From the IMG/VR virus record IMGVR_UViG_3300028592_000004, positions 62,001 to 126,000 of that record: 64,000 nucleotides of DNA, one strand, 5' to 3'. Below, piece by piece: positions 18,879 to 54,224 of the stretch (positions within the stretch are counted from its first letter, which is position 1; the number at the start of each line of letters is the position of its first letter). A model generated the notes under the pieces. The model worked only from the letters and a program-made list of their open reading frames with translations. It was not told the origin of the DNA and made no database searches. The position numbers and the translations under genes were made by a program.

Positions 18879-19820
18879 CTATGAATGGTGGGTTTCCGGC
18901 TTCCAGGACTCAACATGCTGTGTGAACGCTTTACACACCAGCGGATCGTGGAAGAAGTAGTCCGGCACAAACAGCCGATCCCCCTTCCGTTCCACAACCG
19001 CGTCAGTCCACGTCCGGCACAGGAAGCTCATGAGGAGCTTGCAGACCCGCAGCTCGGCATGCGTCTTGTTCAGCCGGCACTGCCGCCAGAGGAAGTTCCG
19101 GGGATCCTCCAGCTGCGCGGCGGTCGGACCCGGCTGCCACTGCCAGGAGTTCAACACCAGCTTGGCTCGATCATTCGGCCCGTACGGTCGCTTCGCTCTC
19201 CCTAGCACCCACGCCATCGTCTGAGGGTTCATCCCCATGTACTGCATGACGCAGGACAGACTGTCAGGCTTGTCCCGCTTCACGTACCACCGGGGATCCC
19301 GGATCGCAGCCACGATACGAGCCAGAGCCGCTGTATCGTGATACCGGAAGAAGCTCCACATCTTCGCCGCCGGATGCGTCCAGAGCATGTTCCGGAGCTC
19401 ACTCTCCGGACGCTTCTGGGCGATCGCATCGGCGAGCGCGTAGGGGACATATTCGACAGCGGACATGACGTGCCACCCTCCCATCGAAGAGGGGAGGCCT
19501 TCGAGCTCACGAGCACGAAGAATAGCAATCCGCGGGTCGTCCATCTCAGCCGCGGTCAAAGACAGTCGTGGCGTGCACAGCTCAATAGGAGCCTGCGTCG
19601 CCACGAACAGTCTGGCAATCAGGACCGAGTTCGATGCAGAGGCAATCACCCGAAACCGCTTGCCACGGCTAATCGTGGGCGTCTCCATGAGAGCGTCCAC
19701 ATTCTCAGCGGCAAGGACCGGCGGGTGTTCGCCGTTCGCGCACCAAACTTGGCCCGTGGGGCACACATGCAGCTTCACGCTCGCGACGTCCGTCACTGCA
19801 CGGCTCGACTTAATCGACAT
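18879..19820 (-). CDS. IS110/Nop-domain-derived protein (Tas-like) with eroded RuvC-like N-domain
   Basis: ARIVAAIRDPRWY...CVMQYMGMNP (cf. AA.I.AEIGD..RF...L.SY.GL.P) and HAELRVCKLLMSFLCRTW (cf. HA..R..K.FL..LW); no DEDD acids and no catalytic SG. Confidence 0.55.
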   Translation of the reverse strand: MSIKSSRAVTDVASVKLHVCPTGQVWCANGEHPPVLAAENVDALMETPTISRGKRFRVIASASNSVLIARLFVATQAPIELCTPRLSLTAAEMDDPRIAILRARELEGLPSSMGGWHVMSAVEYVPYALADAIAQKRPESELRNMLWTHPAAKMWSFFRYHDTAALARIVAAIRDPRWYVKRDKPDSLSCVMQYMGMNPQTMAWVLGRAKRPYGPNDRAKLVLNSWQWQPGPTAAQLEDPRNFLWRQCRLNKTHAELRVCKLLMSFLCRTWTDAVVERKGDRLFVPDYFFHDPLVCKAFTQHVESWKPETHHS

Positions 19821-22062
19821 CAACTTTCCTTCTCCGACGACGTTCTTCTTTGATTCGTGCGACGGGGTGCAGGTCAATCATGTGGTCGAACATAGCCGAA
19901 AGACGCGGTTCGTGCGTCACGATCAAGCACTGAAGGCCTGTGGAAGCGGAAAGCTCCCTCAGACGCTCCACTGTCGGTGCCAGAGCCAGCACGTTCTCCT
20001 CGTCGAGGAACTGCGTGGGCTCATCCAGCGTCAACAGACCCAGGTCCTGGGTGAACAACGTGATGCGGGCTACACGAACCAGAATTCCGAGCAGGACTTT
20101 CTGGCCACCTGAGATTCGATCTGCAACTTGCTCCCGGCCGTCAAGGAACCGAGCAGCAAAGGTGAGTCCATCCGCTTGCCCGATCCTGAAATTCGCATCG
20201 ATCCGATGCAGAAGGTCGTTCGTGTCCTCCGCAATCATCGACAAGTAATCGGCAGCCACGATCTTCGGCAGTTCGAGCATCACCTCCCTCACGGAAGAGA
20301 TGTCCCGCTTCAACCGGATCAGGGCATTGCCGTTCTCCGCCCGAACCTTTGCAGATTCCAGGCGGGCCGTCAGAGTCTTCCGCGTCTTGTCCAGGGACGT
20401 GATCTCCCCTTCCAGACCAGATCGCTCCAGCAGTCGCTTCTTCTTTTCTTCGATCTTCTCCCGAGCTTCAGTCAGCTTCTTGGGATCGACCGCCTTTGGC
20501 TGACCGGCCAGCAACTTGTGCCTCCGGTCCTTCAAGGACTTGAGCGTCGCCTTTGCAGCGGTCACGTCCTTGTCGTGAGTCTGAACGTCCTTCTCGGCCT
20601 CCTGAATTTCGAGGAACACGTCCGAGTGATCCTCCTTCTTCTGAGCGAGAGTCTCTGTCAGCTCTTCATAGGTTGAGACCAGCTCTTCGAGCGTCTCCTT
20701 GTCGCCCTTCGGCGCGGCGGGGACGACAGTCTCTTCCAGTTGATCCTTCGTTCGATGGAAGTCCCTCTGGAGCTCCGCCAGCGCACGGTGCCGCTCAGCG
20801 AAGGCCTGATCGTGCTTACGAGATTTGGCCAGGACCTGCTCCGCAGTGCCGAGCTTGAAAACGAGTTCCTCAACACGATCGTCAGCAGAGTCTGCAATCT
20901 CATAGATTTTCGCCAGCAGCCCAGTCGGATTCCGGACCCGGACATACTGATTGACCAGATCCGAAATATACCTCGTGCTGGCGTATTCCCTGTCGAGCGT
21001 TTCTGTGTAGCTGTCGCGCTCTTCCTCAGGAACATAGTTTTTCGGGCGTTCGGGATCGCCAGCCTCTCGCAGAGTCTTGAGCTGCGCCTGCAACTCCTTG
21101 AGGCGCTTGGCAACCTTCTCTTTGGCCTCAGCAGCACGCTGGTAGGCGGAGAAGTTCTTGAGCACAGCCCGGGCGTCATCAACGTCCGCCTGCGACTCAG
21201 CGAGACCCTGCTCAGTGGCCGTGATCTCGTTATCGATGGCACGGATCTTAGTCCGAAGCTGATCCACCTCATCGGCTGCAGAGGTGTCCTCTTCCAGCTC
21301 CTGGACCTTCTTCTCCTGGGCTGCAATGTCGCGTAGCAGCTGGTCGGCATCGGCCTGAATCCGATCGTACGACTCCTGCTGCTTGATCAACGTCTGAAGC
21401 GGGTCCGCTTCGACGTCGTACCCTTCGACATCCCGATACCGCTTGAGGCTTGAGCCGGCCTTACGAGCGGACGCCTCGTTCTCCGCGAGGGAGCCCTCAA
21501 TCGTTCGGATCTCCACATCGGGATCTCCGATCTCAATTGAGGGGAGCCAGTCAGCAATCGCTTTTGCGACGAGCTCAGCCGCCTTAGTGCCGAACATCGA
21601 CTGGAAGGACTGAAGCCGAACCGCGGGCGTCTGATCGATGAAGTCGTACAGCCGACCCTGCCCGATAAAGCAGTTGTCGGAGATGAGCCGCATGTCGGCT
21701 CCGAGAATACGACCGATCTCAGCCGAGACTTCCGTCTCGCCGAACAGGGGCTTGCCGCCGTTGACCGTCATCTGGGTCTTGCACTTCTGCAAGCCCCGGA
21801 CAATCTCCAGGCGGTCGCCGGCGTGGGTCATGTTCAGAACACCGTAGGACTTCGCACCCTCGGGCGCGAGCGTACAGATGTTCGACTCCTTGACACCGGC
21901 GTTGGTGGTGAAGTCGCCAGTGATCAGCCACTGGACGATCTTCAGGATGCTGCTCTTCCCTGAGCCGTTTGGGCCGACGATTCCATTGATCCCCGGCTTG
22001 AAGTCCACCGACAGCTTGCGGTGGTAGCAGACTTCGAAAGCATCCAGGTGCTCAAGATTCAT
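19810..22062 (-). CDS. sbcC: SbcC/Rad50-like SMC ATPase
   Basis: GPNGSGKSS, long coiled coil, ISGGQK, LDEPTQFLD, IVTHE. Confidence 0.9.
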   Translation of the reverse strand: MNLEHLDAFEVCYHRKLSVDFKPGINGIVGPNGSGKSSILKIVQWLITGDFTTNAGVKESNICTLAPEGAKSYGVLNMTHAGDRLEIVRGLQKCKTQMTVNGGKPLFGETEVSAEIGRILGADMRLISDNCFIGQGRLYDFIDQTPAVRLQSFQSMFGTKAAELVAKAIADWLPSIEIGDPDVEIRTIEGSLAENEASARKAGSSLKRYRDVEGYDVEADPLQTLIKQQESYDRIQADADQLLRDIAAQEKKVQELEEDTSAADEVDQLRTKIRAIDNEITATEQGLAESQADVDDARAVLKNFSAYQRAAEAKEKVAKRLKELQAQLKTLREAGDPERPKNYVPEEERDSYTETLDREYASTRYISDLVNQYVRVRNPTGLLAKIYEIADSADDRVEELVFKLGTAEQVLAKSRKHDQAFAERHRALAELQRDFHRTKDQLEETVVPAAPKGDKETLEELVSTYEELTETLAQKKEDHSDVFLEIQEAEKDVQTHDKDVTAAKATLKSLKDRRHKLLAGQPKAVDPKKLTEAREKIEEKKKRLLERSGLEGEITSLDKTRKTLTARLESAKVRAENGNALIRLKRDISSVREVMLELPKIVAADYLSMIAEDTNDLLHRIDANFRIGQADGLTFAARFLDGREQVADRISGGQKVLLGILVRVARITLFTQDLGLLTLDEPTQFLDEENVLALAPTVERLRELSASTGLQCLIVTHEPRLSAMFDHMIDLHPVARIKEERRRRRKVDVD

Positions 22063-23206
22063 CGTCTTCCTCTTCCTCCTCATCGACCGTAGTGATCACC
22101 TCGGTCTGGATTTTCTTCAGCTCATCGAGCACGGCGTTCTTGCTTTCTGCAATCTCCAGCAAGCGCCGGCACAGCCTGTACTCATCGGATCCCTTCGGCG
22201 TCGCTCGCTCAAGGAACGAGAGCAGACTGGTGCGTTGACCGACGCGGTCCTTCGTCTTCTCGATCCGAACGACCTTTGAACCTGTCGGCCGCGGAGAGAG
22301 GAACACGTGGGCCTGATTGTCGAACGCCGTCATCAGGCGGTCGTACACGTCAGGCAGGTTATCGGGATAGTCCACGTGGATGATCGGCGTACGGACCACC
22401 TCCGGAATATCGTCGTCGTAGAAGTTGCCCTCCTTCGCGTCCTCGCACAGATCGTCCAGTCCACCGATGTCATCGAGGCTGAAGGTGTGGAAGGGGCGAG
22501 TGATGAGCTTCACCGACTTGTAGTCGACGAGCTTGTTCCTGTTGAACTCCAGCTCCCAGAAGGCCTTTTCGGGCGGCTCGTCGATCGACTGCATGCACGT
22601 CGATCCTGGAGAGAAGACACGCAACGTCGAGCCGTCCTCGCGCTTCAGCTTCACCGTCTTGTGCTGATGGAGATCCCCAGTCAGAACGACCGGAGCAGGG
22701 CAGTCTTCGAGTTGACCTTCGACGCCGGGCAGGGTGCCCATGAAGTCAGGTCCACCCCAAACCTGGTGACAGACGAACAGACCGATCTGGAGGTCAGCAG
22801 CCTCTTCAAGCTCGGTGAGAAGCTGGTGAGACGCCTGCCAGTCCAGGCCGTACATCTTCAGGCCACCGATAGTGACGAGCCTGCGATGAAAGTGACGCGG
22901 CCAGGGATGAGCATCGAACCGGGCGCGAACCGCGTTCCGCTCGTGCTGACCCTGAATGAAGTAGAACGGAATCCCAGCTTCCTGCAGCCTGTCGAACTGC
23001 TCGTGAGCCTGGACCTGAATGCTGGGAGTCGGATCCACCGTATCGATCAGGTCACCGGCGCCGATGACGGCGTCGACCTTCTCTTCAACGGCCCGATCCA
23101 CGATTTGCTTCAGAGAGAAAACTGCATCGCCAGCCAGATCCGGGTGACGACGCCAGGCACGCTCCTGAAGGTGCCAGTCTGAGGTGGACAGGAGACGAAT
23201 CGACAC
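22052..23206 (-). CDS. sbcD: SbcD/Mre11-like metallophosphoesterase nuclease
   Basis: SDWHL, GAGDLID, QGQHE, TGDLHQH; coupled to sbcC. Confidence 0.9.
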   Translation of the reverse strand: MSIRLLSTSDWHLQERAWRRHPDLAGDAVFSLKQIVDRAVEEKVDAVIGAGDLIDTVDPTPSIQVQAHEQFDRLQEAGIPFYFIQGQHERNAVRARFDAHPWPRHFHRRLVTIGGLKMYGLDWQASHQLLTELEEAADLQIGLFVCHQVWGGPDFMGTLPGVEGQLEDCPAPVVLTGDLHQHKTVKLKREDGSTLRVFSPGSTCMQSIDEPPEKAFWELEFNRNKLVDYKSVKLITRPFHTFSLDDIGGLDDLCEDAKEGNFYDDDIPEVVRTPIIHVDYPDNLPDVYDRLMTAFDNQAHVFLSPRPTGSKVVRIEKTKDRVGQRTSLLSFLERATPKGSDEYRLCRRLLEIAESKNAVLDELKKIQTEVITTVDEEEEEDDES

Positions 23207-23481
23207 TAGCTCCCTTTCAGAGTGATGACGGGACCAATAAGACCAAGATCGCGCTCGGCAATCTTCTGACCGATCGAGTTCTCGAACTCAACCGAGGCCG
23301 CAGCCAAAGACCTGGCGAGCCGAACACTGGCAAGCCCGCCCATCTTTTCAAGATACGACCGAACGCAGTGAAAGCGATCGCAGATCGGTCGTTCCTTCTC
23401 AACAACAGTCGTGTAGACCGTCAGAAACCTGCGAATGTCGGACTGCCTGGTAGTGCTCACGGATGGTGACCTCATCGACAC
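23206..23481 (-). CDS. hypothetical protein
   Basis: 91-aa ORF filling the gap, stop abuts sbcD start. Confidence 0.5.
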   Translation of the reverse strand: MSMRSPSVSTTRQSDIRRFLTVYTTVVEKERPICDRFHCVRSYLEKMGGLASVRLARSLAAASVEFENSIGQKIAERDLGLIGPVITLKGS

Positions 23482-24238
23482 CGGAACAACCGCGAATGGA
23501 GTGATAGATCTTGAAGTTCGGATGGAGGATCATCGGCGCGGGGGACCAACGCTGATGCTCCTTCGGATGATTCGCATAGACCGGAGCCTCGGGGTTCTCC
23601 ATCGATCCAGCGAACTGCGTCTGAAATCCAAGGGCCTGGCAAAGCCAGGAGATGTAGACATCAGGCCAGAGATCCCACGTCTCGTACTTCTCCGGCGCCA
23701 GGAAGCGTCGCTCAACAAGGCGGTCTACGAACTTCCGCGACATCCAGTGAGATGCGAAGAAGATCGTTTCTGCGGTCGGAGCAAAGTCCGCGGGCAGCTC
23801 GGTACAGAGGTCGCGAACGAACGCACCTCGGGACGGCCACCACATCTGATAGTTGACGCGATCCCGGACCCCGAGCAGATCGACATCGCACTTCTCCATC
23901 TCCAGGCGAGCCCAGATATCAAGATGCAGACCGATGGGCAGAGCATCATCGTCGAGGACGAGAACGCGATCGAAGGTGATGCCCTGATCGATCGCCCACT
24001 GGATGCCCTGGTAGGTGATGAAGCCAGACAGGTTCAGCTTCGGCATCAGCTTGTTGGGAATGACAGCGTACTCACGCGGGCCGGGCTCCGGCCCGAATGG
24101 CGAGTCGATGGCGCCGCCGCCGTCGACGATCACCATCAGGAATGACTCGCTGTGAGACCACTCGATCGCCTCGAACTGGTCTGTGGCGATGAACTGGCCC
24201 CGGTTCGTCGCCATCACGACCAAGGTTTTGACGTGCAT
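23399..24238 (-). CDS. GT-A fold glycosyltransferase-like protein
   Basis: LMVIVDGG, RVLVLDDDALP, WPDVYISW; TAATG coupling to upstream gene. Confidence 0.6.
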   Translation of the reverse strand: MHVKTLVVMATNRGQFIATDQFEAIEWSHSESFLMVIVDGGGAIDSPFGPEPGPREYAVIPNKLMPKLNLSGFITYQGIQWAIDQGITFDRVLVLDDDALPIGLHLDIWARLEMEKCDVDLLGVRDRVNYQMWWPSRGAFVRDLCTELPADFAPTAETIFFASHWMSRKFVDRLVERRFLAPEKYETWDLWPDVYISWLCQALGFQTQFAGSMENPEAPVYANHPKEHQRWSPAPMILHPNFKIYHSIRGCSGVDEVTIREHYQAVRHSQVSDGLHDCC

Positions 24239-25296
24239 TATCGGCTTTCGATCAGCCGGACCCACTGTTGAAGGTAAAGGCCCAGCTTAGGAACGTAGTT
24301 GCGGGTGTCTTCGTAGACAGAGTCGGCGGGTACGTCCTTGACCGCCACGGGATTCATGAGGAACTCACCGAGCTCCATCGCGCACGAAGAGAACGTGTTC
24401 GACGTCAGCTTCGCGTTGTCGATGATATCGACCAGGAACTCGTTGGCCAGGACACCCGGCGCCTCGCGGACCAGGTTGATCATGGGCTTGCTGGCGCGGG
24501 AGTGGTGGATGACCGGGTTACCCACGGCAATCGACCATCCAAGCTGGCGACAGATCCGTTGCAGAATCCAGCCGCCCCAGATGTCGTCGAATCGGAAGAA
24601 GGGCGTCCCGTTCCCCATCTTGGGGAAGTACGAGGCCGGCGCCGCTTCGGTGTTGATGGCAAAGTTCATCCCGCAGAGCGGAGTGAGCTGCCGCGGATTG
24701 AGCAGCTGGGTCATGACACGCGGGCAGCGATAGCCACCCGGCGTCTCCATACCGGACCGTTCTTTCGTCGGAGCCAGGGAGTGGATGGCGTCAAAGTCCG
24801 GGATCCCATCCCACAGGCCCACACTGGCTGCGACCTGATTCAAGTCTTTCTGCCGCTCATAAGGCAGGCCACGAACATGCAGGTGGCCAAGCGGAGACGA
24901 GAAGCGGGGGAAACCGCTGAGCTGGGCCAGGTGAGCCCGCGCCACGAAATCCGGATTCCGTTCGTCGACCGGGAAACAGTCGTCGTCCAGAATCAGGACC
25001 CGCTTCTCGTTGCTCCGCACAGCCTTCAGCAGGGCTGCCATTTTGATGCCGGGATCGCCGATCGAGATACACTCGGCGTCCGGTCCCCAGCTCTGAATCT
25101 CGTCGACCGTGATGATCTCGCAGTCGATGAAGGAGTAACGTTCGACCAACTCCCTCGCCTTGGGCAGCGTGGCGGTGTCCGCGTACACCAGATAGAAGGT
25201 GCCGAAAGGCCAACTTCGTTCTGAGCTGTCGCACCACTTCTCCAGAAACCACTCCAGATGCTTGATGCGGTTCGAGGCCATCGCCAGAGCAATCAT
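24238..25296 (-). CDS. reversibly glycosylated polypeptide / UDP-arabinopyranose mutase-like protein (GT75)
   Basis: ILDDDCFP, VRGLPY, VGLWDGIPDFDA, PLCGMNFA, RFDDIWGGW, HHSRAS, NLVREAPG follow the RGP/UAM motif series. Confidence 0.8.
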   Translation of the reverse strand: MIALAMASNRIKHLEWFLEKWCDSSERSWPFGTFYLVYADTATLPKARELVERYSFIDCEIITVDEIQSWGPDAECISIGDPGIKMAALLKAVRSNEKRVLILDDDCFPVDERNPDFVARAHLAQLSGFPRFSSPLGHLHVRGLPYERQKDLNQVAASVGLWDGIPDFDAIHSLAPTKERSGMETPGGYRCPRVMTQLLNPRQLTPLCGMNFAINTEAAPASYFPKMGNGTPFFRFDDIWGGWILQRICRQLGWSIAVGNPVIHHSRASKPMINLVREAPGVLANEFLVDIIDNAKLTSNTFSSCAMELGEFLMNPVAVKDVPADSVYEDTRNYVPKLGLYLQQWVRLIESR

Positions 25297-25305
25297 TGCT
25301 TCGCC

Positions 25306-26094
25306 TTACAGTACATCCCGTACTGACTGTGGGATCGGTTCGAGGGGCTGCATTGCCCCGATGTTGTCCACGTTTGTCCGGAACCACTTCTCGAACTCTT
25401 CGTCCGAACAGCGGTTCTGGAAGCCGGCACCTGCGGCAATGTCTGCCTTGCTCCACTTCCGATTCCGGAAGCGTTCCAGGCGACGACGGGCGACAGCATA
25501 ATCCAGCTTGTGCAGGTGGACAAGAAGGAGGTTCGGGTCGACCGAAATCGTCTTGTGCGGGACGAGGATCGACTCGTGGAAACCCTTGCACCACATCATC
25601 GGTACACGGCTCAAAAGCGGCTTGCTGTACTGCGTGGTCGGATACCACCAACCGCGGTGTTCCAGCATCCGACTCTGGATCAGAGCCTGATCCTCTTCAC
25701 CGATCTGATGCACAACCTCAAAGCCAGTGCATCGCACGACAGGCTGAACCATGTCGGCCGCGTACTCGACCAGATTCGTGTAGTGCGAGGCCGGATCAGT
25801 CAGGACGAACTCGTCGACCTCGACGAAGAGGACCGCCTCATAGCTGTTCAGCAGGAAGTGCTGGAAGTCCTGAACCGTCTTCAGCATCCAGTCGTGATCG
25901 ACCTCGTCGTTGAAGACCGACACGACACGGATATCGCGTGCAACCGCATCCTCCAGCGCCAGGTTGTCGTCCGAGTGGTTGTCCAGAATGAACAGGTCCG
26001 AACCATACCCATGATTGATGTAGTGGTCGCACCAGACCGGCAGAAACTCCGGCTCATCCTTGACGATCGTGAAGATGGCTAGGGGTTTTCGCAT
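25306..26094 (-). CDS. GT2-like glycosyltransferase (Glyco_tranf_2_4 type)
   Basis: IVKDEPEFLPVWCDHY, ILDNHSDD, VLFVEVDEF, LLLVHL. Confidence 0.75.
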   Translation of the reverse strand: MRKPLAIFTIVKDEPEFLPVWCDHYINHGYGSDLFILDNHSDDNLALEDAVARDIRVVSVFNDEVDHDWMLKTVQDFQHFLLNSYEAVLFVEVDEFVLTDPASHYTNLVEYAADMVQPVVRCTGFEVVHQIGEEDQALIQSRMLEHRGWWYPTTQYSKPLLSRVPMMWCKGFHESILVPHKTISVDPNLLLVHLHKLDYAVARRRLERFRNRKWSKADIAAGAGFQNRCSDEEFEKWFRTNVDNIGAMQPLEPIPQSVRDVL

Positions 26095-27515
26095 CCAAGG
26101 GCTTTCAGAATCTGCGTCGTGCTGTACTCTGGCAGACGCGGGACGTAGTAGGTCTCCTTGACCAGGTCACTGCCCACGGCTCCGCCGGGCAGGTCGATGT
26201 CATCCGCGACGCGGACAAGCACGTCAGGACGGATCAAGCGAATCAGCTCGCTCGGCGTCTGCTCGTTGAAGACGACGACGAGATCGACGCAGCCCAAGGC
26301 AGCGACCATCTCAGCGCGATCGCCCTGCTTTGTCTTCGGACGATTCGGCCCCTTGCTGGCCGACACGCTGCTGTCGGTGTTCACCGCGCCGATCAAACGG
26401 GTGCCGCGGCGGCGGGCCTCCACGAGAACGTGGACGTGCCCGGGATGCAGCATGTCAAAGCACCCGTTGCTGAAGACGACCTTCTCGCCGGCAGCCTGCC
26501 ACTGAGCACAGGCCAGGGCCGCAACCTCTGCACTGACGATCTTGAAGTACGGATGAATCGCGGCAGCCTTCGCCAGCCGCAGTTCGAGGGGATCGACGAC
26601 AGACGTCCCGGGCTTCGTCACAACCGTACCTGCCGCCAGGTTCGCAATCTGAATCGCCAGCGGAAGGTTGTCGTGAGAGATAAGCTCGACCGCCAGTGTT
26701 GCCGTAAACGTGTCGCCGGCACCGCAGACGTCATAGACATGCGAAACCCGCGTCGGAAATCGACTGACGCCAGCTTGATCGAACAGAATCGCTCCGTTCC
26801 GGCCGTTGGTGCAGACAACGTTGCTGACGATTCCGTCGAGCCCAAGGTCGACCAGGCTCTCGGAACCATTCTCAATCTCATCAACCTCCAGACCGGAAAT
26901 CTGAGCCAACTCAGTTTCATTCGGAGTGATGACGAACGCGCCACGGAGGTACGAAAAATGGACCGGCCGCGGATCGACGATGACCTTGGCGCCGGCAGCG
27001 TTCGCGTACTTGATCACTTCGGAGAGCAGGCTGTGCCTCGTACCGAGGGCACCTTTCGCGTAGTCGGAGATCAGGACGATCTTGTACGAATTCGCGTTCA
27101 GGACTGCCTTCAAGCGAGTCAGGTAGTCCGCGGCGCTGGCCGGTGCGTGCGGCTGATCGTTGTCCTCCCGGGTCAGCAGACGGGTGCCACTCCAGATCCG
27201 ACGCTTAACGGTCGGGCCAGCGAAGCGACGCTCGCTGCCCACCGAGTAGATGTCGATGGCGTGATGGCCGCACAGTGCGACGAGGTCCGAACGATGCGTC
27301 TCGTCGGACATCACAGTGAACAGGTCGCAACGGCCATGCAGGGCGGCGACATTGGCAGCGACGTTTGCAGCTCCGCCGAGGGAGCGAGTCACTGACTGGC
27401 GCTGGTAGACCGGAATCGGGGCCTCGGCCGCGATCCGAGTGGGCTCGACGAAGACTGCCTCGTCGATCATGACATCGCCGATCACGAGAATCTGCGATGG
27501 ATCCTGCTGGGGCAT
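26079..27515 (-). CDS. hldE: bifunctional heptose-7-phosphate kinase / heptose-1-phosphate adenylyltransferase
   Basis: VIGDVMID...EAPIPV, GGAANVA, VYDVCGAGDTF (PfkB) plus VFSNGCFDMLHPGH, NTDSSV..SKGPNRP. Confidence 0.9.
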   Translation of the reverse strand: MPQQDPSQILVIGDVMIDEAVFVEPTRIAAEAPIPVYQRQSVTRSLGGAANVAANVAALHGRCDLFTVMSDETHRSDLVALCGHHAIDIYSVGSERRFAGPTVKRRIWSGTRLLTREDNDQPHAPASAADYLTRLKAVLNANSYKIVLISDYAKGALGTRHSLLSEVIKYANAAGAKVIVDPRPVHFSYLRGAFVITPNETELAQISGLEVDEIENGSESLVDLGLDGIVSNVVCTNGRNGAILFDQAGVSRFPTRVSHVYDVCGAGDTFTATLAVELISHDNLPLAIQIANLAAGTVVTKPGTSVVDPLELRLAKAAAIHPYFKIVSAEVAALACAQWQAAGEKVVFSNGCFDMLHPGHVHVLVEARRRGTRLIGAVNTDSSVSASKGPNRPKTKQGDRAEMVAALGCVDLVVVFNEQTPSELIRLIRPDVLVRVADDIDLPGGAVGSDLVKETYYVPRLPEYSTTQILKALGCENP

Positions 27516-27516
27516 T

Positions 27517-27534
27517 TCAATTCCCGGGGATTAA
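27517..27534. promoter_or_regulatory. 18-bp palindromic operator-like motif
   Basis: TCAATTCCCGGGGATTAA (16/18), 1 nt before hldE ATG. Confidence 0.65.
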
Positions 27535-27737
27535 TTTCCATCGAAACCGCGAGAGGTATGCGGTGGAGCAATTTCGCCTGTGAGACCTCGGCCTCGATCG
27601 CGAACGCTGACGTCGCGATTGCTCTGGTTGCAAGGCGGGCAGATGAAGTTGAACCGGCCGATCTTTGGGAACGGCTTTCGACATTTCAAACACAGCCGGG
27701 TCTCACGACCCGGCTGCGATTCATTCTCTTTGGACAT
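27531..27737 (-). CDS. small C4 zinc-finger protein
   Basis: CLKCRKPF...FICPPC. Confidence 0.7.
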   Translation of the reverse strand: MSKENESQPGRETRLCLKCRKPFPKIGRFNFICPPCNQSNRDVSVRDRGRGLTGEIAPPHTSRGFDGN

Positions 27738-27744
27738 CCTTGTC
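27733..27744 (-). promoter_or_regulatory. CsrA-type binding hairpin on start codon
   Basis: GACA-AGGA-UGUC containing the AUG at 27737. Confidence 0.65.
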
Positions 27745-27768
27745 TAACCTGCGACCATCCGGGTCGGC

Positions 27769-28995: not shown

Positions 28996-29036
28996 GCTTC
29001 ATTCTTCCTTCGAGTGGGTGCTCAGAGCAGAGCGAA

Positions 29037-29228
29037 CTAGGACTGGATCTCGGCCGCGGGGCCGGCAATTTTCGGCTGAAGTTCATCACGCCAGATACGG
29101 CAGTTGCTCGGCGCGTTGACGCCGATCCGTGCCTTATCCTGGCGGCTGTCGCAGAGGACGATCTCAATCAGACCATCACTGGTCTCGATGACGATCTTTT
29201 CGTTTTTCTTACGGGACAGGACGAGCAT
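29037..29228 (-). CDS. csrA: carbon storage regulator CsrA/RsmA homologue
   Basis: MLVLSRKKNEKIVI...ARIGVNAP..CRIWRDEL; start ATG 29228. Confidence 0.92.
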   Translation of the reverse strand: MLVLSRKKNEKIVIETSDGLIEIVLCDSRQDKARIGVNAPSNCRIWRDELQPKIAGPAAEIQS

Positions 29229-29311
29229 TTTCGAATCCTTCTTTTGACGTGGTGATAGCCCTCCTGGGCGTAGGGTAACTGGTCCGGGAAACCGACTACA
29301 AGGGCCGGAAT

Positions 29312-30277
29312 CTACCGAAGAAATTCGCCAAACGCCGCGACGTTGCGTCGGCGGCACATGGCGTTGTAGAGGTCGACGACCTGATTCAGATCTCTCGATC
29401 GAAGAAGATACGTCGGGTAGCGCTGGACGCTGGCCAGGGCCTTGACTGCGTCCATCGGCGTGGGCTGCTCAATGCGCCGCACTTGGATTCGACCCAGACC
29501 GGACCGACTCGGATCACCGTAGACGGCTTCAGGAATCTGGGCACCAGCCGGATACAGCAACAACTGTCGGAACCGCATTGTCGGATGGGTTCCCTGTTTG
29601 TCGCCAGACAGGCTCATCACCTCAATCGCGCCGCTAGCCTCGAACTGGCGCATCATCTTCCGGGCTCGCCAGCGGTCGATCCGCGTGTCGATGAACTGTG
29701 TGAACGACATCTTCAGGCCGGCACGACGAATCGAGTAGAACTGCGGATCGTGCAGAACATGCTCATACACGGCATGTGAGTACGTTTCCGATCGAACAAC
29801 GAGGTCGTACTTCGTACAAGGCTGGGCAAGTCTCTGCCGGAACATCGACCAACCGTCGTCCTCTGGGTAGAGGTACGTGTCAGCCAGCTGCGGAAAGAGA
29901 ACTCGTTCGATCTGTTGCCAGCTGTTGCCAACGCGACGGGACCAACACCAGGGGCAGATGTTGGCGAGATTGCAATGTCGAAGGTTAAACGACTTGCCAC
30001 CCTCTTTGAGTCCGATGTCGCAACAGACGGGCATGCAGTTCAGAACATACGAGAGGTGATCTTCCCGATTGCCAGTGGTCTCCTCCCACCCGTTCTTCGT
30101 CAGCAACCCGACCCGAGCCCTCCAAATCGAAAGCACGGACGCCAGAGCCTCCTTAGTCGCCTGCTTGCCGGAAACAGGGTGACCGACGATCGTCGAAATG
30201 ACGGCGTAGATCTGAGAGAGGCTGAACGGACTCGCAATTTTCGGGTAGAGGATCTTGAGCGGCAGAATTTTCGGCAC
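29312..30277 (-). CDS. remote rolling-circle Rep (HUH family)-like protein with Zn knuckle, HUH motif lost
   Basis: CNLANICPWCWSRR (cf. Rep_1 C..RLCP.C.WRR), GAIEV, SVQRYP (cf. AKY), C-terminal AMCRRRNVAAFGEF. Confidence 0.45.
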   Translation of the reverse strand: MPKILPLKILYPKIASPFSLSQIYAVISTIVGHPVSGKQATKEALASVLSIWRARVGLLTKNGWEETTGNREDHLSYVLNCMPVCCDIGLKEGGKSFNLRHCNLANICPWCWSRRVGNSWQQIERVLFPQLADTYLYPEDDGWSMFRQRLAQPCTKYDLVVRSETYSHAVYEHVLHDPQFYSIRRAGLKMSFTQFIDTRIDRWRARKMMRQFEASGAIEVMSLSGDKQGTHPTMRFRQLLLYPAGAQIPEAVYGDPSRSGLGRIQVRRIEQPTPMDAVKALASVQRYPTYLLRSRDLNQVVDLYNAMCRRRNVAAFGEFLR

Positions 30278-32534: not shown

Positions 32535-33656
32535 TCAAACTGCCTGTGTGGTGGAACGGGGACGGGTCTTGAGGTAGCGGGTCAGCTCTTCGTCGCTCAT
32601 CTCGTCGAGCGCCATCTGAGCCGACAGCTCGTACGGCTGCATCCGCATGCCGTACACCTCGGGGATGCCTTCGATCATGCGCGTCTTCGCGCCGTAGAAG
32701 GCCAGGGGATACTTCGCCTTGACCATCTCGAAGATCTTGGCGAAGACAAAGCGGATCTCCCACTCCGCGAACTTGGCGGTCCGCATCAGCACGGTGTGCC
32801 GAAGCGTCCGCAAGTTGCACGAGAACGCGATCTCATTCGACTGACCGTTGGGAGCGATCCGCCGAATGGCGCTGGTCATCTTCTTCCGGATGTCGAAGTT
32901 GAAGGAGTTGTCCGGCTCCCACTTCAGGTGATGGGCCAGCTCAGCGACAACTTCACCACTCCAGTCTCCCGCGGCATCCTTTGGCGTACTGAGCAGCGCC
33001 TTGATGACGTCGGGTACGTGATCCCGGTAAGACTTCTCGATCAGGAGACCGGCATTCCGCACGGCGTTGTAGTTGCCGAAGGTGAGGTCTTCGGCGAACA
33101 GGTGCTTCGACAGACCGCCAGGCGGCTTCCGAAGACCGAGCCGGCACTCAGCCAGGTAGACCGTCTTCTCGATCTGGGCGGCGCACGTCTCGAACAGGTC
33201 CCGCACCGGATTCAGGATCGGGTCCCACACGAGCTGCATGTTCTCGATCCGACAGTAACGGCCGGACGTCTGACTGAACGCCGTGCCGATCCGATGTCGA
33301 ACGAGCTCATGGGTGAAGACCCGACTGCAGTCCCGAATCAGGAAGTTGAACTGGACGTGCTCGAAGATCGACCCGTGGGCCGTATCGAAGCATCCGACCA
33401 GGTTGTCCCAGATATCCCGGGTCCGCGACACGTTCGAGTTCTTCCCAAGCGTGAGGCTCTTGTAGCAGAGCTTCGCGAACATCGAGCAGAGGATCTCCGC
33501 CCACGACAGACCCTGCTTGAGGGCCAGGTCCACTGACTCCAGGAACTGCTGATTCCCGGTGTCGATCAGGTAGCGGCTGACCTCGTTCTCGTCGACCTGG
33601 GTGAAGCCAACGAAGTAGACGCTGGGCTGCACGAAACGTTCAAACTCATCATCCAT
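32535..33656 (-). CDS. thyX: flavin-dependent thymidylate synthase
   Basis: AKLCYKS, HGSIFEH, SRVFTHELVRHR, SQTSGRY. Confidence 0.92.
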   Translation of the reverse strand: MDDEFERFVQPSVYFVGFTQVDENEVSRYLIDTGNQQFLESVDLALKQGLSWAEILCSMFAKLCYKSLTLGKNSNVSRTRDIWDNLVGCFDTAHGSIFEHVQFNFLIRDCSRVFTHELVRHRIGTAFSQTSGRYCRIENMQLVWDPILNPVRDLFETCAAQIEKTVYLAECRLGLRKPPGGLSKHLFAEDLTFGNYNAVRNAGLLIEKSYRDHVPDVIKALLSTPKDAAGDWSGEVVAELAHHLKWEPDNSFNFDIRKKMTSAIRRIAPNGQSNEIAFSCNLRTLRHTVLMRTAKFAEWEIRFVFAKIFEMVKAKYPLAFYGAKTRMIEGIPEVYGMRMQPYELSAQMALDEMSDEELTRYLKTRPRSTTQAV

Positions 33657-52068: not shown

Positions 52069-52446
52069 CTAGAAGGTCACTTTGAGGTGCTTTCCATTCT
52101 TGCGGTAGAGGATGGCACAACCATCTACAGGGTATCCGATCTTGCCCTGGATGAAGAGACGCACTCGCTCTCGTACTTCAGGGCTCGCGTTGCTGATGAC
52201 TTCCACGAAGGAGTTCCGATAGCCGTCGATCGTCTTGCTGCCCGGCCCGCAGCACTGATTCGTGCTCAGCTCCGAGAGCATGACCTGATACGCCGGCACG
52301 GTGTAGACGCCGAACCCGCGGAACTCCGGGCAGGCCGCGAAAAAGGTGGGATCACCGAGTAGTTGCCGGAGCAGCTCCTTGGTGACGATCAGGAAGTTAG
52401 GCCCGGATGCTTCTCGCTCAGTCCGCGGCGGGGAACTGCCGACCAT
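52069..52446 (-). CDS. hypothetical protein, apparent paralogue of 51316..51630
   Basis: Start MVGSSPP at 52446; similar helix/Cys layout. Confidence 0.55.
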   Translation of the reverse strand: MVGSSPPRTEREASGPNFLIVTKELLRQLLGDPTFFAACPEFRGFGVYTVPAYQVMLSELSTNQCCGPGSKTIDGYRNSFVEVISNASPEVRERVRLFIQGKIGYPVDGCAILYRKNGKHLKVTF

Positions 52447-54224
52447 TCGATGACGTCCTTCCGCAGGGAGAACTGCTGAATCTTGAGGCCTTGCTGATAC
52501 ACCGCGGCGCCATTCATGACGTCTCCGCCGTTGTGACCGAGACGCAGGTCTGGGATGTTTGCTTGCCGCATTGCCGATGTCCGGATCGCCCAGAAGGCAC
52601 CAACAGGAAAGTGGACACGGTCGCCGCTCGCCTGGGTTCGTCCAAAGCTGTCCTGCCAGGGCCGGCCCGTGTACCACGAACCACCCGCGGCCCACGCTTT
52701 CTGCCCTGGCGTCAGCCGATAGTGCTTCACTGGACCGAGCATGTCCGCGTTAGTAGCGACGATCTTCTGCGCCAGGATCTGCATCCAGCGGGCATCCCGA
52801 TCGCAGAACGTGTCGTCGTCCATCCAGATCAGGTAAGGCGTCTCGATCGGCAGCTCCGGGTCGTAGAACATCTCCCGCATCACCGGGTACTTCTTGGCGT
52901 TCTCGACGTGCTGGTAGTGCTTGCGGATCAGGTTCTGGCTGACGAGTTCTTCCACCAGCTTCAACGACTCGGGTCCGAGTTCGTTGCTGCCGATCCGCAG
53001 ATCCATCCGATCGCGAGGCACGGTGCTGGTGATGGCGTGTAGGAACCGCCGGTGCATTTCGGGGTAGTCGCCATACAGCAGGCCGAAGATCGTAAAGCGT
53101 CCACCAATCTTGGGGTGATCGAAGATGGAGTGATCCACAGGCTGTCCGATGACTCTCAGCTGGAACTGGCTTGCCGGCGCCGGCTTCTTTGTCAGGCTGC
53201 GGCGGACCGTTCCATCGTTCTTGTGATCCAGGCTGGTCCGGTCAATCTGGAAGAGCGGCTCGGCCTTGTCGATCGCCTGAAGCGTGCCATCCGTGTAGTA
53301 CGACATGACAGCGTCTACGACCATCTCCGGCGAGATCATGTCGAGGCACTTCGGCACGGTCTCTTCGCCTTGCCGAATCGGATAGACGCAGTTCTGGCTC
53401 GGGTCGTCGCCGACGACTTTGCTTCGCCAGCAGCCGTGATGCTCGCAGCAGTCGAGCTGGCCGATCGTGTGCAGGAATCGGTGTGGGACCTGGATCTTCT
53501 CGGGACAGACCAGGCCGGAGTTCTCTCGGATGTAAGCCTCCCACCACCACGCCTCACGTCCGCCGGCCAGACAGACGCACGGCTTCTGCAGAGCTGCGGC
53601 GGCGTGCATCAGCATCGTCACACCGCAGATGGCGCCATCAGCGCCGTGGAGCAATCGCAGGACATCTCGAAGGGTCGTCTTGTTGACGAGGTTGATGACT
53701 CCCCTGAGTTCCGGGTGCCAGTTGTTCTTCGCGTCGGTTCCGATATGGACGACGTTGATGCCACGCTCCGCCAGCATGTCGACAACACGCTGAAAGCGAT
53801 CGATCCGCCACACCTTCGCAGGCATGTCGGCCTTCCCGCCCGAGATCATGATCCAGTACCGACCGCTGAAGATGCGCGTCTTTTCATACGCGCTCAGGTG
53901 GAGATCCGGATAGGGCTGTGTCACCGGAGCGACGAGGCCCGTCCGCTTCTGCAGGTCTCGGTGAAACCACGGCATGAAGTGGACGACTTCGTTCCGCTGG
54001 GCCTTGATCCCCTCGCCGTACTCCAGCTGGACAACTCGGCTCTCTTTCGGAAAGCCCGATCCCGTGTTGTGGAGGCGGATATGCGGGTTGTTCTCCCACA
54101 AGGCACTGTAGGTCGTCATCACGCCGATCTCGACATCCGGTCGAGCCAGGGCAAGATCCCGGACCACACCCGTCATGGCGATGATATCGCCGGGCGCCCG
54201 CCTATGCTTCAGCACCAGCTTCAC
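52389..54224 (-). CDS. GT9 (ADP-heptose heptosyltransferase-like) fused to a GT-A domain
   Basis: GDIIAM, PAKVW...F, NKTTLRDV, LMHAAAALQKP (GT9); C-terminal IWMDDDTF. Confidence 0.85.
   Translation of the reverse strand: MKLVLKHRRAPGDIIAMTGVVRDLALARPDVEIGVMTTYSALWENNPHIRLHNTGSGFPKESRVVQLEYGEGIKAQRNEVVHFMPWFHRDLQKRTGLVAPVTQPYPDLHLSAYEKTRIFSGRYWIMISGGKADMPAKVWRIDRFQRVVDMLAERGINVVHIGTDAKNNWHPELRGVINLVNKTTLRDVLRLLHGADGAICGVTMLMHAAAALQKPCVCLAGGREAWWWEAYIRENSGLVCPEKIQVPHRFLHTIGQLDCCEHHGCWRSKVVGDDPSQNCVYPIRQGEETVPKCLDMISPEMVVDAVMSYYTDGTLQAIDKAEPLFQIDRTSLDHKNDGTVRRSLTKKPAPASQFQLRVIGQPVDHSIFDHPKIGGRFTIFGLLYGDYPEMHRRFLHAITSTVPRDRMDLRIGSNELGPESLKLVEELVSQNLIRKHYQHVENAKKYPVMREMFYDPELPIETPYLIWMDDDTFCDRDARWMQILAQKIVATNADMLGPVKHYRLTPGQKAWAAGGSWYTGRPWQDSFGRTQASGDRVHFPVGAFWAIRTSAMRQANIPDLRLGHNGGDVMNGAAVYQQGLKIQQFSLRKDVIEWSAVPRRGLSEKHPGLTS

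What the first reader, a model, noticed from the sequence alone, without database searches (positions are those of the whole stretch)
23399..26094. RGP/UDP-arabinopyranose mutase-like gene in a three-glycosyltransferase block fused to the SbcCD operon
Seen: a GT75/RGP motif series (DDDCF, RGLPY, GLW.GIPDFDA, CGMN, RFDDIW.GW) flanked by two GT-A genes, translationally coupled to hldE upstream and to sbcD downstream through one small ORF. Established: plant RGPs interconvert UDP-Arap and UDP-Araf, and phage DNA arabinosylation is known in other phages. Inference: furanose-sugar supply for DNA or protein glycosylation. Early/middle placement among DNA genes makes DNA modification a real alternative, although no hydroxylase or hydroxymethylase is visible here.
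Basis: partly seen in the sequence, partly recalled or inferred. Interest (0 to 1): 0.6.

Follow-up and report, generated by a model that had tools for sequence, protein, structure and literature searches.

The report
Phage GT75 sugar mutase glycosylation cassette
A soil jumbo phage carries a real, apparently active relative of the plant UDP-arabinopyranose mutase inside a compact sugar-transfer gene cassette next to its SbcCD nuclease genes, but the genome lacks the enzymes that all known phage DNA-sugar systems need, so the sugar probably goes onto something other than DNA.

Summary
Window 24238-25296 (-) encodes a 352-aa GT75/RGP protein (Pfam RGP, E 1e-23). It keeps every catalytic residue defined in the MtdL crystal structures. 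It lies in a gap-free run: HldE-like, GT-A gene 'GT1', RGP, GT-A gene 'GT2', a small ORF, SbcD, SbcC.

The window is part of a 229-kb uncultured soil jumbo phage. The same cassette, with optional parts, sits upstream of SbcCD in at least eight other phage contigs. GT1 is present wherever its position is covered. RGP, GT2, HldE, a sulfotransferase and CsrA come and go. In bacteria GT1-RGP-SDR epimerase is a unit inside polysaccharide loci.

HldE tracks an HldD-like epimerase and a GT9 heptosyltransferase (window 52389-54224) across six phage genomes. It does not track RGP.

The genome has no ThyA-type hydroxymethylase or hydroxylase, no TET/JBP, no C5-methylase and no TAGT. It has ThyX, and a complete relative has a canonical ThyA. 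DNA glycosylation by any known route is therefore not supported here.

GT75 genes occur in at least 109 IMG/VR contigs. Some sit beside a dCMP-hydroxymethylase-like gene, others beside capsid genes.

Best reading: a furanose-supplying glycan cassette with a non-DNA acceptor. The acceptor is unresolved.

The parts
24238..25296 (-). GT75/RGP-family NDP-sugar pyranose-furanose mutase homologue, 352 aa (P0001)
   Evidence: Pfam RGP 84.4 bits. PDB MtdL E 2e-14, or E 5e-35 with a family profile. Family-invariant residues D104-D106, R142, D167, R235, D238, H265 map onto MtdL D109-111, R159, D195, R257, D260, H287 (PMC9937993).
25306..26094 (-). GT1: soluble GT-A glycosyltransferase, 262 aa (P0002). 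Conserved partner of GT75 in bacteria and in this phage clade.
   Evidence: Weak Pfam Glyco_tranf_2_4 match. AF2 pLDDT 93.7, best folds GalS1 (GT92) and SunS/ThuS. 42-43% identical to the gene directly upstream of RGP in two bacterial contigs. Present in every cassette variant, including those without RGP.
23399..24238 (-). GT2: soluble GT-A glycosyltransferase, 279 aa from the ATG at 24238 (P0125). Belongs to a rare family seen here only in phage-like contigs.
   Evidence: No Pfam, PHROG or NCBIfam hit. AF2 pLDDT 84.3, generic GT-A fold with Z up to 15. The N-terminal 115 residues are homologous to the GT75 nucleotide-binding half (hhalign 92%, E 7e-7). Only 101 representatives among 1.84 billion proteins.
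26079..27515 (-). HldE-like bifunctional sugar-phosphate kinase and nucleotidyltransferase, 478 aa (P0004)
   Evidence: Pfam PfkB plus CTP_transf_like. NCBIfam HldE 325 bits, best hit but under the 521 cut-off. phrog_7878.
23206..23481 (-). Uncertain small ORF between GT2 and SbcD (91 aa from a GTG, or about 45 aa from an ATG near 23343)
   Evidence: Direct reading. No family hit and no tblastn match in relatives. Relatives carry an unrelated small ORF, and usually an opposite-strand CsrA, at this spot.
22052..23206 (-). SbcD-like nuclease subunit
   Evidence: Pfam Metallophos, phrog_100.
19810..22083 (-). SbcC-like ATPase subunit
   Evidence: Pfam SMC_N and AAA_23, phrog_77.
29037..29357 (-). 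CsrA homologue (domain at residues 44-97 of this ORF), about 1.5 kb upstream of HldE
   Evidence: Pfam CsrA 54.9 bits. tblastn with a relative's CsrA gives E 2e-7. CsrA lies inside the cassette in six relatives.
27531..27737 (-). 68-aa ORF with two CxxC pairs (zinc-ribbon-like) between orf408 and HldE
   Evidence: Direct reading. No Pfam hit.
52389..54224 (-). 611-aa glycosyltransferase with an N-terminal GT9 (heptosyltransferase) domain and a weak C-terminal GT2 signal, in the late region. Likely main user of ADP-heptose.
   Evidence: Pfam Glyco_transf_9 53 bits at residues 57-221. GT2 signal in the same frame. Co-occurs with HldE and HldD in 4 of 4 genomes and is absent from the 2 genomes without them.
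32535..33656 (-). ThyX (flavin-dependent thymidylate synthase) with an insertion of about 80 residues. The only thymidylate-synthase-type gene in the genome.
   Evidence: No PF00303 hit anywhere in the 229 kb.

Best explanation
The ORF is a genuine and probably active GT75 enzyme, a metal-dependent, flavin-independent NDP-sugar pyranose-furanose mutase of the RGP/UAM/MtdL family. It is one part of a modular accessory glycan cassette placed in the replication and recombination module just upstream of SbcDC.

Proposed mechanism:
1. A host-made NDP-pyranose is converted to the rare NDP-furanose by the mutase. The donor is most likely a UDP-sugar, because the pocket resembles plant UAM and carries Asp where MtdL's guanine-permitting Ser86 sits. 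Catalysis would use the DDD motif, Mn2+-binding His265 and catalytic Arg142.
2. GT1, the GT-A enzyme that is the mutase's fixed neighbour in bacteria and phages, uses the furanose donor.
3. GT2, a second GT-A whose nucleotide-binding half derives from the same stock as GT75, adds or extends another sugar.
4. HldE, together with an HldD-like epimerase 113 kb away, raises ADP-heptose. That chiefly feeds the GT9-type heptosyltransferase in the late region and possibly the same glycan.

The acceptor is most likely not DNA. My leading candidate is a phage protein (virion glycosylation), with a host envelope glycan second.

Shown: family membership, conservation of catalytic residues, GT-A folds, gene order and its conservation, and absence of the known DNA-acceptor enzymes. 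Inferred: mutase activity, donor identity, the division of labour between GT1 and GT2, and the acceptor.
For: - GT75 membership and intact active site: mapped onto the MtdL mutagenesis data.
- GT1-RGP adjacency in two bacterial polysaccharide loci, each with an SDR epimerase.
- The cassette lies upstream of SbcCD in L007, L008, L011, L012, L020, L023 and L105; L104 carries HldE-GT1-GT2 but ends before that position. Optional parts vary.
- The RGPs of this clade group together and sit beside the bacterial clade in the tree.
- GT2's N-terminal half is homologous to GT75.
- Both transferases are soluble, acidic (pI 5.2) GT-A proteins.
- HldE, HldD and GT9 co-occur in 4 of 4 genomes and are absent from the other 2.
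- The genome holds further GT genes.
- No ThyA-type, TET, C5-MTase or TAGT gene. ThyX is present. Relative G002 has a canonical ThyA.
- In other phages GT75 lies beside the major capsid gene with a GT4 and a 4,6-dehydratase-like SDR.
Against: - No enzyme activity, donor or acceptor has been measured.
- The block sits in the DNA replication and recombination module in all relatives, not next to structural genes.
- In other phage lineages GT75 lies beside a dCMP-hydroxymethylase-like ThyA homologue (Asp at the N177 position), a dNMP kinase and a dCMP deaminase, or beside a phrog_842 DNA-glucosyltransferase-like gene. A DNA role for phage GT75 in general is therefore plausible.
- HldE is adjacent to GT1 in four independent contigs (window, L012, L104, L105), which suggests a more direct link than I assign it.
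- CsrA and a sulfotransferase in the same island point to host glycan metabolism rather than to virions.
- Nucleotide specificity cannot be read from the sequence.
Confidence: 0.45

Rival explanations
1. DNA hypermodification. The cassette furanosylates, and perhaps heptosylates, phage DNA to evade restriction.
For: - Placement among replication and recombination genes is conserved across relatives that are only about 30-45% identical.
- In other phage lineages GT75 is in the same module as a dCMP-hydroxymethylase-like ThyA homologue, DnaE, a dNMP kinase and a dCMP deaminase, or next to a phrog_842/TAGT-family GT.
- Phage DNA carrying Araf, Galf or heptose is documented (PMC13326640; bioRxiv 2023.12.21.572611).
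Against: - Every documented route needs a hydroxylated pyrimidine made by a ThyA homologue or by a methyltransferase plus TET. This complete 229-kb genome has none of these and no known DNA-GT family.
- It has ThyX. Relative G002 has a ThyA with L143, H147, D169 and N177 retained.
- GT1 is 42-45% identical to bacterial enzymes that sit in polysaccharide loci.
- Both GTs are acidic. This is weak evidence.
Confidence: 0.15
2. Host envelope remodelling. The island (CsrA, HldE, GT1, RGP, GT2, plus a sulfotransferase in relatives) rewires host LPS or exopolysaccharide synthesis during infection, for example to exclude superinfection or to stop progeny adsorbing to debris.
For: - CsrA is in or next to the cassette in this phage and in six relatives.
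- Five relatives carry a Sulfotransfer_3 gene on the opposite strand, moron-like.
- HldE and HldD are LPS-core pathway enzymes.
- GT1's nearest cellular relatives lie among GT2, GT4 and membrane glycosyltransferase genes.
Against: - None of the four proteins has a membrane segment or a signal sequence.
- No flippase, polymerase or lipid-carrier transferase was seen nearby.
- This sort of seroconversion is typical of temperate phages, and no lysogeny genes were seen in the window.
- GT2 is a family seen here only in phage-like contigs.
Confidence: 0.22
3. The GT75 protein acts on ADP-heptose from the adjacent HldE and makes ADP-heptofuranose, which GT1 or GT2 then transfer.
For: - HldE is immediately upstream of GT1 in four independent contigs (window; L012; L104 and L105).
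- The L012 HldE passes the curated adenylyltransferase-domain cut-off.
- The GT75 base-contacting positions differ from both GDP-type MtdL and the bacterial or plant P-type.
Against: - L104 and L105 have HldE-GT1-GT2 with no RGP.
- G002 has GT1-RGP-GT2 with no HldE or HldD anywhere in a complete genome. The two parts are therefore separable.
- HldE co-varies with a GT9 heptosyltransferase.
- I know of no ADP-sugar GT75 substrate and no ADP-heptofuranose.
Confidence: 0.1
4. The protein is not a mutase. It is a self-glycosylating RGP-type protein or a plain transferase, like plant class-2 RGPs, serving as a primer or scaffold.
For: GT75 members autoglycosylate a conserved Arg, and some plant members lack mutase activity (PMC9937993). 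The Arg (R142) is conserved.
Against: Inactive AtRGP5 lacks the residues equivalent to R257 and H287. The class-2-like PDB entry 8cid also lacks them in the profile alignment. The phage protein keeps both, as R235 and H265, along with every residue whose mutation abolished MtdL mutase activity except the position equivalent to D87.
Confidence: 0.08

Closest known systems
MtdL / Hyg20 (bacterial GT75 GDP-L-galactose and GDP-L-fucose pyranose-furanose mutases; PDB 7xpr, 7yua)
   Same: Same family and fold by sequence (E 2e-14 for the single sequence, 5e-35 for the family profile). Shared features: the DxD motif, the catalytic or autoglycosylated Arg, the sugar-binding Asp and Arg residues, and the Mn2+-binding His.
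   Different: Only about 25-30% similar, mostly over the core. The phage protein has CGMN where MtdL has the S228-Q229 motif. It has Asp where MtdL has Ser86, and the S86D change abolished GDP binding in MtdL. It has Pro at the D87 position. It lacks the loop of about 12 residues after the RG(F/L)P motif. The context is a phage cassette, not an antibiotic gene cluster.
Plant class-1 RGP / UDP-L-arabinopyranose mutase (UAM)
   Same: Pfam RGP match over residues 33-320. Active-site motifs are closer to plant UAM than to MtdL: DDDCF, RG-x-P-(Y/F), GLW-x-x-PD-(F/Y)-DA, CGMN, R-(F/Y)-DD-(I/M)-W, H-S-(R/K)-A-S. The plant motifs are recalled from my own knowledge and partly visible.
   Different: The phage encodes no UDP-xylose synthase or UDP-xylose 4-epimerase. 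The only SDR in the genome is HldD-like. The nucleotide-contacting N-terminal positions differ: Ala where plants and bacteria have Pro. The substrate is untested.
Rhizobium phage RL38J1 (Pootjesviridae): UGM plus DNA glycosyltransferases that put Gal on 5-hydroxycytosine
   Same: A phage-encoded NDP-sugar pyranose-furanose mutase placed with glycosyltransferases among DNA-metabolism genes (PMC13326640).
   Different: RL38J1 uses a flavin-dependent UGM, not GT75. It also has a ThyA-type 5hodCMP synthase that supplies the acceptor. This genome has neither.
RB69/DLP3/HY126 arabinosyl-5-hydroxycytosine pathway (AfhE/AfhF-type)
   Same: A bifunctional kinase and nucleotidyltransferase next to glycosyltransferases, following the logic of the ADP-heptose pathway, with a furanose as final sugar.
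   Different: That pathway builds Araf-1-P directly and needs no mutase. Its bifunctional enzyme has a MurU-like domain and a different kinase fold, so it is not an HldE. It needs an isomerase, a HAD phosphatase and a ThyA homologue, none of which were found here.
Bacterial GT1-like / GT75 / SDR-epimerase trios in polysaccharide loci (uncharacterised; e.g. L002, L010)
   Same: GT1 is 42-43% and RGP 35-36% identical, in the same order and orientation. The phage clade is sister to this bacterial clade in the RGP tree.
   Different: The bacterial loci have an adjacent SDR epimerase and membrane GTs. The phage cassette has instead GT2, HldE, CsrA or a sulfotransferase, and it abuts SbcCD.

Membership tests
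GT75 (RGP/UAM/MtdL NDP-sugar mutases) | Significant match to the family model over most of its length | tested here: met
   Pfam PF03214: 84.4 bits against a cut-off of 23.8, residues 33-320 aligned to model positions 30-319 of 342. A profile of 31 homologues hits MtdL at E 5e-35 and PDB 8cid at E 2e-29.
GT75 (RGP/UAM/MtdL NDP-sugar mutases) | DxD motif whose third Asp binds Mn2+ (MtdL D109-D111) | tested here: met
   D104-D105-D106-C107 is invariant in 31 homologues and aligns to the MtdL DDD motif.
GT75 (RGP/UAM/MtdL NDP-sugar mutases) | Conserved autoglycosylated and catalytic Arg (MtdL R159, OsUAM1 R158) | tested here: met
   R142 in RGLPY is invariant. The profile alignment places it on MtdL R159 in R-G-F-P-F. 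The single-sequence phmmer alignment mis-registered this segment onto an upstream GFP tripeptide.
GT75 (RGP/UAM/MtdL NDP-sugar mutases) | Sugar and phosphate ligands D195, R257, D260 and Mn2+ ligand H287 (with R289); loss of the R257 and H287 equivalents marks inactive AtRGP5 | tested here: met
   D167, R235, D238 and H265 are invariant and R267 is nearly invariant.
GT75 (RGP/UAM/MtdL NDP-sugar mutases) | Reversible NDP-pyranose to NDP-furanose conversion, dependent on a divalent cation | not testable with these tools
   Needs purified protein and HPLC or NMR.
UDP-L-arabinopyranose mutase specifically | UDP-L-Arap as substrate, with a UDP-Xyl or UDP-Ara supply available | tested here: inconclusive
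   The pocket motifs are plant-like (CGMN; Asp at the MtdL Ser86 position). However, the genome has no UXS- or UXE-type SDR, only one HldD-like SDR. The host is unknown (soil metagenome).
HldE (ADP-heptose synthesis) | Fused RfaE kinase and adenylyltransferase domains scoring above the curated cut-offs, with the pathway partners GmhA, GmhB and HldD | tested here: inconclusive
   The architecture and best hit are HldE, but 325 bits is under the 521 cut-off, and both domain models are also under their cut-offs. An HldD-like SDR is present (176 bits against 275). GmhA and GmhB are absent and would have to come from the host.
Known phage DNA glycosylation systems (T4 hmC, RB69 5hoC, MT+TET+TAGT) | An enzyme that makes a hydroxylated pyrimidine acceptor (a ThyA-family hydroxymethylase or hydroxylase, or a C5-MTase plus TET/JBP) | tested here: not met
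   No hit for PF00303, PF12851 or PF00145 in the complete 229-kb record. tblastn with three phage ThyA-type proteins found nothing. Caveat: the PF12851 control search barely rang.
Known phage DNA glycosylation systems (T4 hmC, RB69 5hoC, MT+TET+TAGT) | A member of a known DNA glycosyltransferase family | tested here: not met
   No TAGT (PF20691) hit. tblastn with the phrog_842-type GT found nothing. GT1 and GT2 compared with the TAGT cluster by hhalign give probabilities of 0.2% and 24%.
Phage virion-glycosylation cassettes | Glycosyltransferases placed among structural genes | tested here: not met
   This block lies in the replication module. The separate GT9 gene at 52389-54224 does lie in the late region. 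Other phage GT75 genes are next to capsid genes.

The most novel reading that the evidence does not exclude
This jumbo-phage clade puts a furanose, and in some members a heptose, onto its DNA through an acceptor chemistry that needs no ThyA-type or TET-type hydroxylated pyrimidine. The GT75 mutase would supply the donor, GT1 and GT2 would act as a new class of DNA glycosyltransferase, and this would explain why the cassette is locked to SbcCD and the replication genes.
Probability: 0.08. Interest if true: 0.9.

Novelty: new variant of a known kind. Interest (0 to 1): 0.55.

Why it matters
GT75 is known from plants and from two antibiotic pathways. My full-text searches found no paper linking it to phages.

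Here it appears in at least 109 viral contigs, in four recurrent settings:
- next to SbcCD;
- next to a dCMP-hydroxymethylase-like gene, DnaE and a dNMP kinase;
- next to a phrog_842-type DNA glucosyltransferase;
- next to the major capsid gene.

Phages may therefore use a flavin-independent mutase as a general way to obtain furanose donors. Furanoses are absent from most host glycans and are poorly recognised by host enzymes. For this window, the cassette offers a small set of soluble proteins that can be expressed to look for a new furanosyltransferase pair and its acceptor. The other lineages offer candidate new DNA hypermodifications.

Tried and rejected
- Megablast of the block against 50,697 phage records found no match. 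The terminase has only 23-30% identical relatives, so there is no cultured relative to lean on.
- The search for related loci with the single protein found nothing. The alignment-based scan worked.
- The promoter and terminator scan of 19000-30500 found no more sites than shuffled sequence. The single-operon reading therefore rests on gene packing alone.
- hhalign among the GT families that accompany GT75 in different phages gave only weak links: GT2 to unk267 66%, GT2 to TAGT 24%, GT1 to everything below 1%. I do not claim that they are one family.
- Fold searches for GT1 and GT2 gave broad GT-A matches that do not identify an acceptor. An ESM Atlas search for GT2 gave GT2-like bacterial neighbours only.
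- Complex prediction for RGP with GT1 returned no verdict, with a score of 0.00. This is not evidence either way.
- I considered the idea that HldE makes the mutase's substrate and down-weighted it, because the parts occur independently.
- The look-up of sequencing runs showed only soil metagenome DNA holders and no RNA.
- My first crude ORF caller picked wrong-strand ORFs in this 60% GC genome, so I did not use it for annotation.

Full report
WHAT IS THERE

The window is bases 62001-126000 of a 229,210-bp IMG/VR virus record that CheckV rates as complete. GC content is about 0.60. Near-identical DNA occurs only in soil metagenomes.

It is a phage. The window holds a large terminase subunit, collagen-like tail fibres, a DnaE-type polymerase, DnaB, helicases, a RecA-like protein, a ligase, RNase H and ThyX. 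No cultured phage is close: megablast found nothing, and the terminase is at most 30% identical to any cultured phage's.

The minus strand carries a gap-free run of genes:
- a CsrA homologue (within 29037-29357);
- an unknown 408-aa protein;
- a 68-aa CxxC...CxxC ORF (27531-27737);
- an HldE-like kinase and nucleotidyltransferase (26079-27515);
- GT1 (25306-26094);
- the GT75/RGP gene (24238-25296);
- GT2 (23399-24238);
- an uncertain small ORF;
- SbcD (22052-23206) and SbcC (19810-22083).

The junctions are a 16-nt overlap, a 9-nt spacer, a TAATG overlap, and a stop-start overlap with a good Shine-Dalgarno site before SbcD. The promoter and terminator scan found nothing above chance.

THE GT75 GENE

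Pfam RGP scores 84.4 bits, E 1e-23. The closest solved structures are the bacterial GT75 mutase MtdL (deposited as 'Transglycosylse', 7xpr/7yua) and a UDP-arabinopyranose mutase entry, 8cid.

I took the defining residues from the MtdL structure paper (PMC9937993). I then checked them on an alignment of 31 homologues and on the profile-to-MtdL alignment:
- The DxD motif (D104-D106) is invariant.
- The autoglycosylated and catalytic Arg is R142 in RGLPY, equivalent to MtdL R159.
- D167 corresponds to D195, R235 to R257 and D238 to D260.
- The Mn2+ ligand H265 corresponds to H287, and R267 to R289.

The residues whose absence marks inactive AtRGP5 (the R257 and H287 equivalents) are both present. 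The protein therefore looks like an active mutase.

Three positions bear on specificity:
- The SQ pair of MtdL is GM here (CGMN), as I recall for plant UAMs.
- The position of MtdL Ser86 is Asp. The S86D change abolished GDP binding in MtdL, which argues against a GDP-sugar.
- The position of MtdL Asp87 (Ser in plants and in most bacterial homologues) is Pro in this protein and in its nearest relative P0006.

The substrate cannot be named from sequence.

THE TWO NEIGHBOURS

GT1 gives a confident AlphaFold model (pLDDT 93.7). It has a GT-A fold closest to plant GalS1 (GT92) and to the glycocin S-glycosyltransferases SunS and ThuS. Its only family signal is a sub-threshold Glyco_tranf_2_4 match.

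GT2 has no family hit at all. It also folds as GT-A, with pLDDT 84.3 and Z 13-15 to dozens of GT-A enzymes. Its first 115 residues, up to the DDD motif, are homologous to the nucleotide-binding half of GT75 (hhalign 92%, E 7e-7).

GT2's family is rare. An exhaustive HMM search of 1.84 billion representatives found 101 proteins. The four homologues whose contigs I fetched and that had neighbouring genes sit in this same kind of phage cassette.

All four proteins of the block are acidic and have no membrane segments.

THE CASSETTE IS MODULAR AND CONSERVED

Database homologues led to large phage contigs with the same layout:
- L007 (246 kb), L008 (231 kb), L011 (111 kb) and L020 (161 kb): sulfotransferase (opposite strand), GT1, RGP, GT2, CsrA (opposite strand), a small ORF, SbcD, SbcC, then helicase and DnaB.
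- L023 (226 kb, complete): the contig ends inside RGP, so only RGP, GT2, CsrA, SbcD, SbcC and onwards are visible.
- L012: HldE, sulfotransferase, GT1, RGP, CsrA, SbcD, SbcC. It has no GT2.
- L105 and L104: HldE, GT1, GT2 (then CsrA, SbcD and SbcC in L105). They have no RGP.
- This window: HldE, GT1, RGP, GT2, with CsrA 1.5 kb upstream.

GT1 is the constant part wherever its position is covered. The other parts are optional. Protein identities among these phages are about 27-47%, so the arrangement is old.

In bacteria the pair GT1-like plus RGP, followed by an SDR epimerase, lies among GT2, GT4 and membrane glycosyltransferase genes (L002 and L010). A maximum-likelihood tree (quick search) puts the SbcCD-linked phage RGPs together, next to that bacterial clade.

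WHERE HldE BELONGS

The genome also encodes an SDR whose best match is ADP-glyceromanno-heptose 6-epimerase, HldD. It lies at genome 200434-201327 (176 bits, below the cut-off).

There is also a 611-aa protein with a GT9 heptosyltransferase domain in the late region, at window 52389-54224. No GmhA or GmhB was found.

Across six phage genomes that carry GT75, the genes for HldE, HldD-like and GT9-like proteins are all present in four (this one, G003, G004 and LR756511). In LR756511 the GT9 signal is weak (E 2e-3, below the family cut-off). All three are absent in two (G001 and the complete G002).

HldE therefore looks like part of an ADP-heptose module whose obvious consumer is the GT9 enzyme. 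Against that, HldE is adjacent to GT1 in four independent contigs. I therefore keep open that heptose enters the same glycan.

IS DNA THE ACCEPTOR?

Every documented phage DNA glycosylation starts from a hydroxylated pyrimidine:
- 5hmC or 5hmU from ThyA-family hydroxymethylases;
- 5-hydroxycytosine from ThyA homologues carrying D169N (RB69, DLP3, RL38J1; PMC13326640);
- 5hmC from a C5-methyltransferase plus TET (bioRxiv 2023.12.21.572611).

This complete genome has no PF00303, PF12851 or PF00145 match. tblastn with three phage ThyA-type proteins, a phrog_842-type GT, a dNMP kinase and a dCMP deaminase also found nothing. There is no TAGT. It does have ThyX.

The complete relative G002 has a ThyA that keeps the residues tied to dUMP specificity and a methyl product (G-L-A-P-C-H and R-S-I-D...P-F-N). 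The numbering follows the residue list.

The RB69-type arabinose pathway needs no mutase. It is therefore not a precedent for a GT75 role.

I rate DNA modification in this clade at about 0.15.

GT75 ELSEWHERE IN PHAGES

An alignment-based scan of IMG/VR found 109 contigs that encode a GT75 relative. Clustering their neighbours and annotating representatives gives recurrent settings that follow the GT75 phylogeny:
- Setting a: major capsid, a GT4-like GT, a dTDP-glucose-4,6-dehydratase-like SDR, then RGP.
- Setting b: a ParB-like protein, a TAGT/phrog_842 GT (annotated 'beta-glucosyl-HMC-alpha-glucosyltransferase', E 2e-72), RGP, then large terminase.
- Setting c: DnaE, RGP, a dNMP-kinase-like protein, an unknown 403-aa protein, then dCMP deaminase. 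All four searchable contigs of this type carry a divergent ThyA homologue. In the two I read, the active-site sequence is P-C-T...R-S-N-D...G-L-T-N-D, so Asp replaces N177 as in dCMP hydroxymethylases.

Settings b and c are good candidates for furanosylated hmC DNA. Setting a is a candidate for virion glycosylation. These are leads about other phages. They raise the prior for a DNA role of phage GT75 in general, but they do not supply the missing acceptor enzyme here.

VERDICT

The most likely function is a mutase that supplies an NDP-furanose to its conserved partner GT1, with GT2 as a second transferase. The whole is a modular accessory glycan cassette.

The acceptor is unresolved. I put a phage protein first and a host envelope glycan second, on the basis of CsrA, the sulfotransferase and the bacterial kinship of GT1. 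DNA comes third.

The complex prediction for RGP with GT1 gave no verdict and is not used as evidence.

Noticed in passing
window 52389-54224 (-): A 611-aa protein with an N-terminal GT9 (ADP-heptose heptosyltransferase family) domain and a weak C-terminal GT2 signal, among late genes. It co-occurs with HldE and HldD across phage genomes. It is a possible protein or glycan heptosyltransferase.
   Followed up: partly
L004:12115-13740 (-) = genome 202115-203740, outside the window: A Ro60/TROVE plus vWA orthologue (Pfam E 1e-56 and 8e-38) next to a NUDIX hydrolase (L004:11586-12062), the HldD-like SDR (L004:10434-11327) and a PAS-domain protein (L004:9704-10354). I did not look for a Y-RNA-like partner RNA.
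   Followed up: no
window 32535-33656 (-): ThyX of 373 aa. The Thy1 domain spans 264 residues for 181 model positions, so it carries an insertion of about 80 residues. Relatives of this phage use ThyA instead.
   Followed up: no
L077, L044, L068, L071 (IMG/VR contigs); ThyA homologues at L109:1273-2226 (-) and L107:1282-2211 (-): A different phage lineage has GT75 between DnaE and a dNMP-kinase-like gene, an unknown 403-aa gene and a dCMP deaminase. It also has a ThyA homologue with Asp at the N177 position and a changed L143 and H147 region, like a dCMP hydroxymethylase. This is a candidate furanosyl-hmC DNA system.
   Followed up: partly
L082, L086, L087, L091, L072, L076, L081 (IMG/VR contigs): The gene order is ParB-like protein, TAGT/phrog_842 'beta-glucosyl-HMC-alpha-glucosyltransferase'-like GT, then GT75, with large terminase next in L082, L086 and L087. 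No ThyA or TET gene was found on these short fragments.
   Followed up: partly
L030, L037, L040, L047, L051, L054, L058 (IMG/VR contigs): GT75 lies next to the major capsid gene with a GT4-like glycosyltransferase and a dTDP-glucose-4,6-dehydratase-like SDR. This looks like a cassette for 6-deoxyhexofuranose decoration of virions.
   Followed up: partly
window 29037-29357 (-), and opposite-strand genes in L007, L008, L011, L012, L020, L023, L105: A phage-encoded CsrA (carbon-storage regulator) is a near-constant companion of the cassette. A Sulfotransfer_3 gene accompanies it in five relatives but is absent from this genome (tblastn).
   Followed up: partly
window 9058-13146 (-): A DnaE-type polymerase of 1362 aa. 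A short PHROG match to a ribonucleotide-reductase family at residues 1012-1050 may mark an intein or another insertion.
   Followed up: no
G001 genome 129189-130709 and G003 genome 77628-79568 (loci L100-L103): ThyA homologues are split into two matched halves within single open frames of 555 and 662 aa, which suggests an intein-like insertion. In G003 and G004 the ThyA gene lies within about 1 kb of an HldE-like gene.
   Followed up: no
window 62093-63967 (-): A 624-aa collagen-repeat tail-fibre protein with many PHROG tail-fibre hits. Collagen-like repeats are glycosylation substrates in giant viruses (my own recollection), so it is a candidate acceptor.
   Followed up: no
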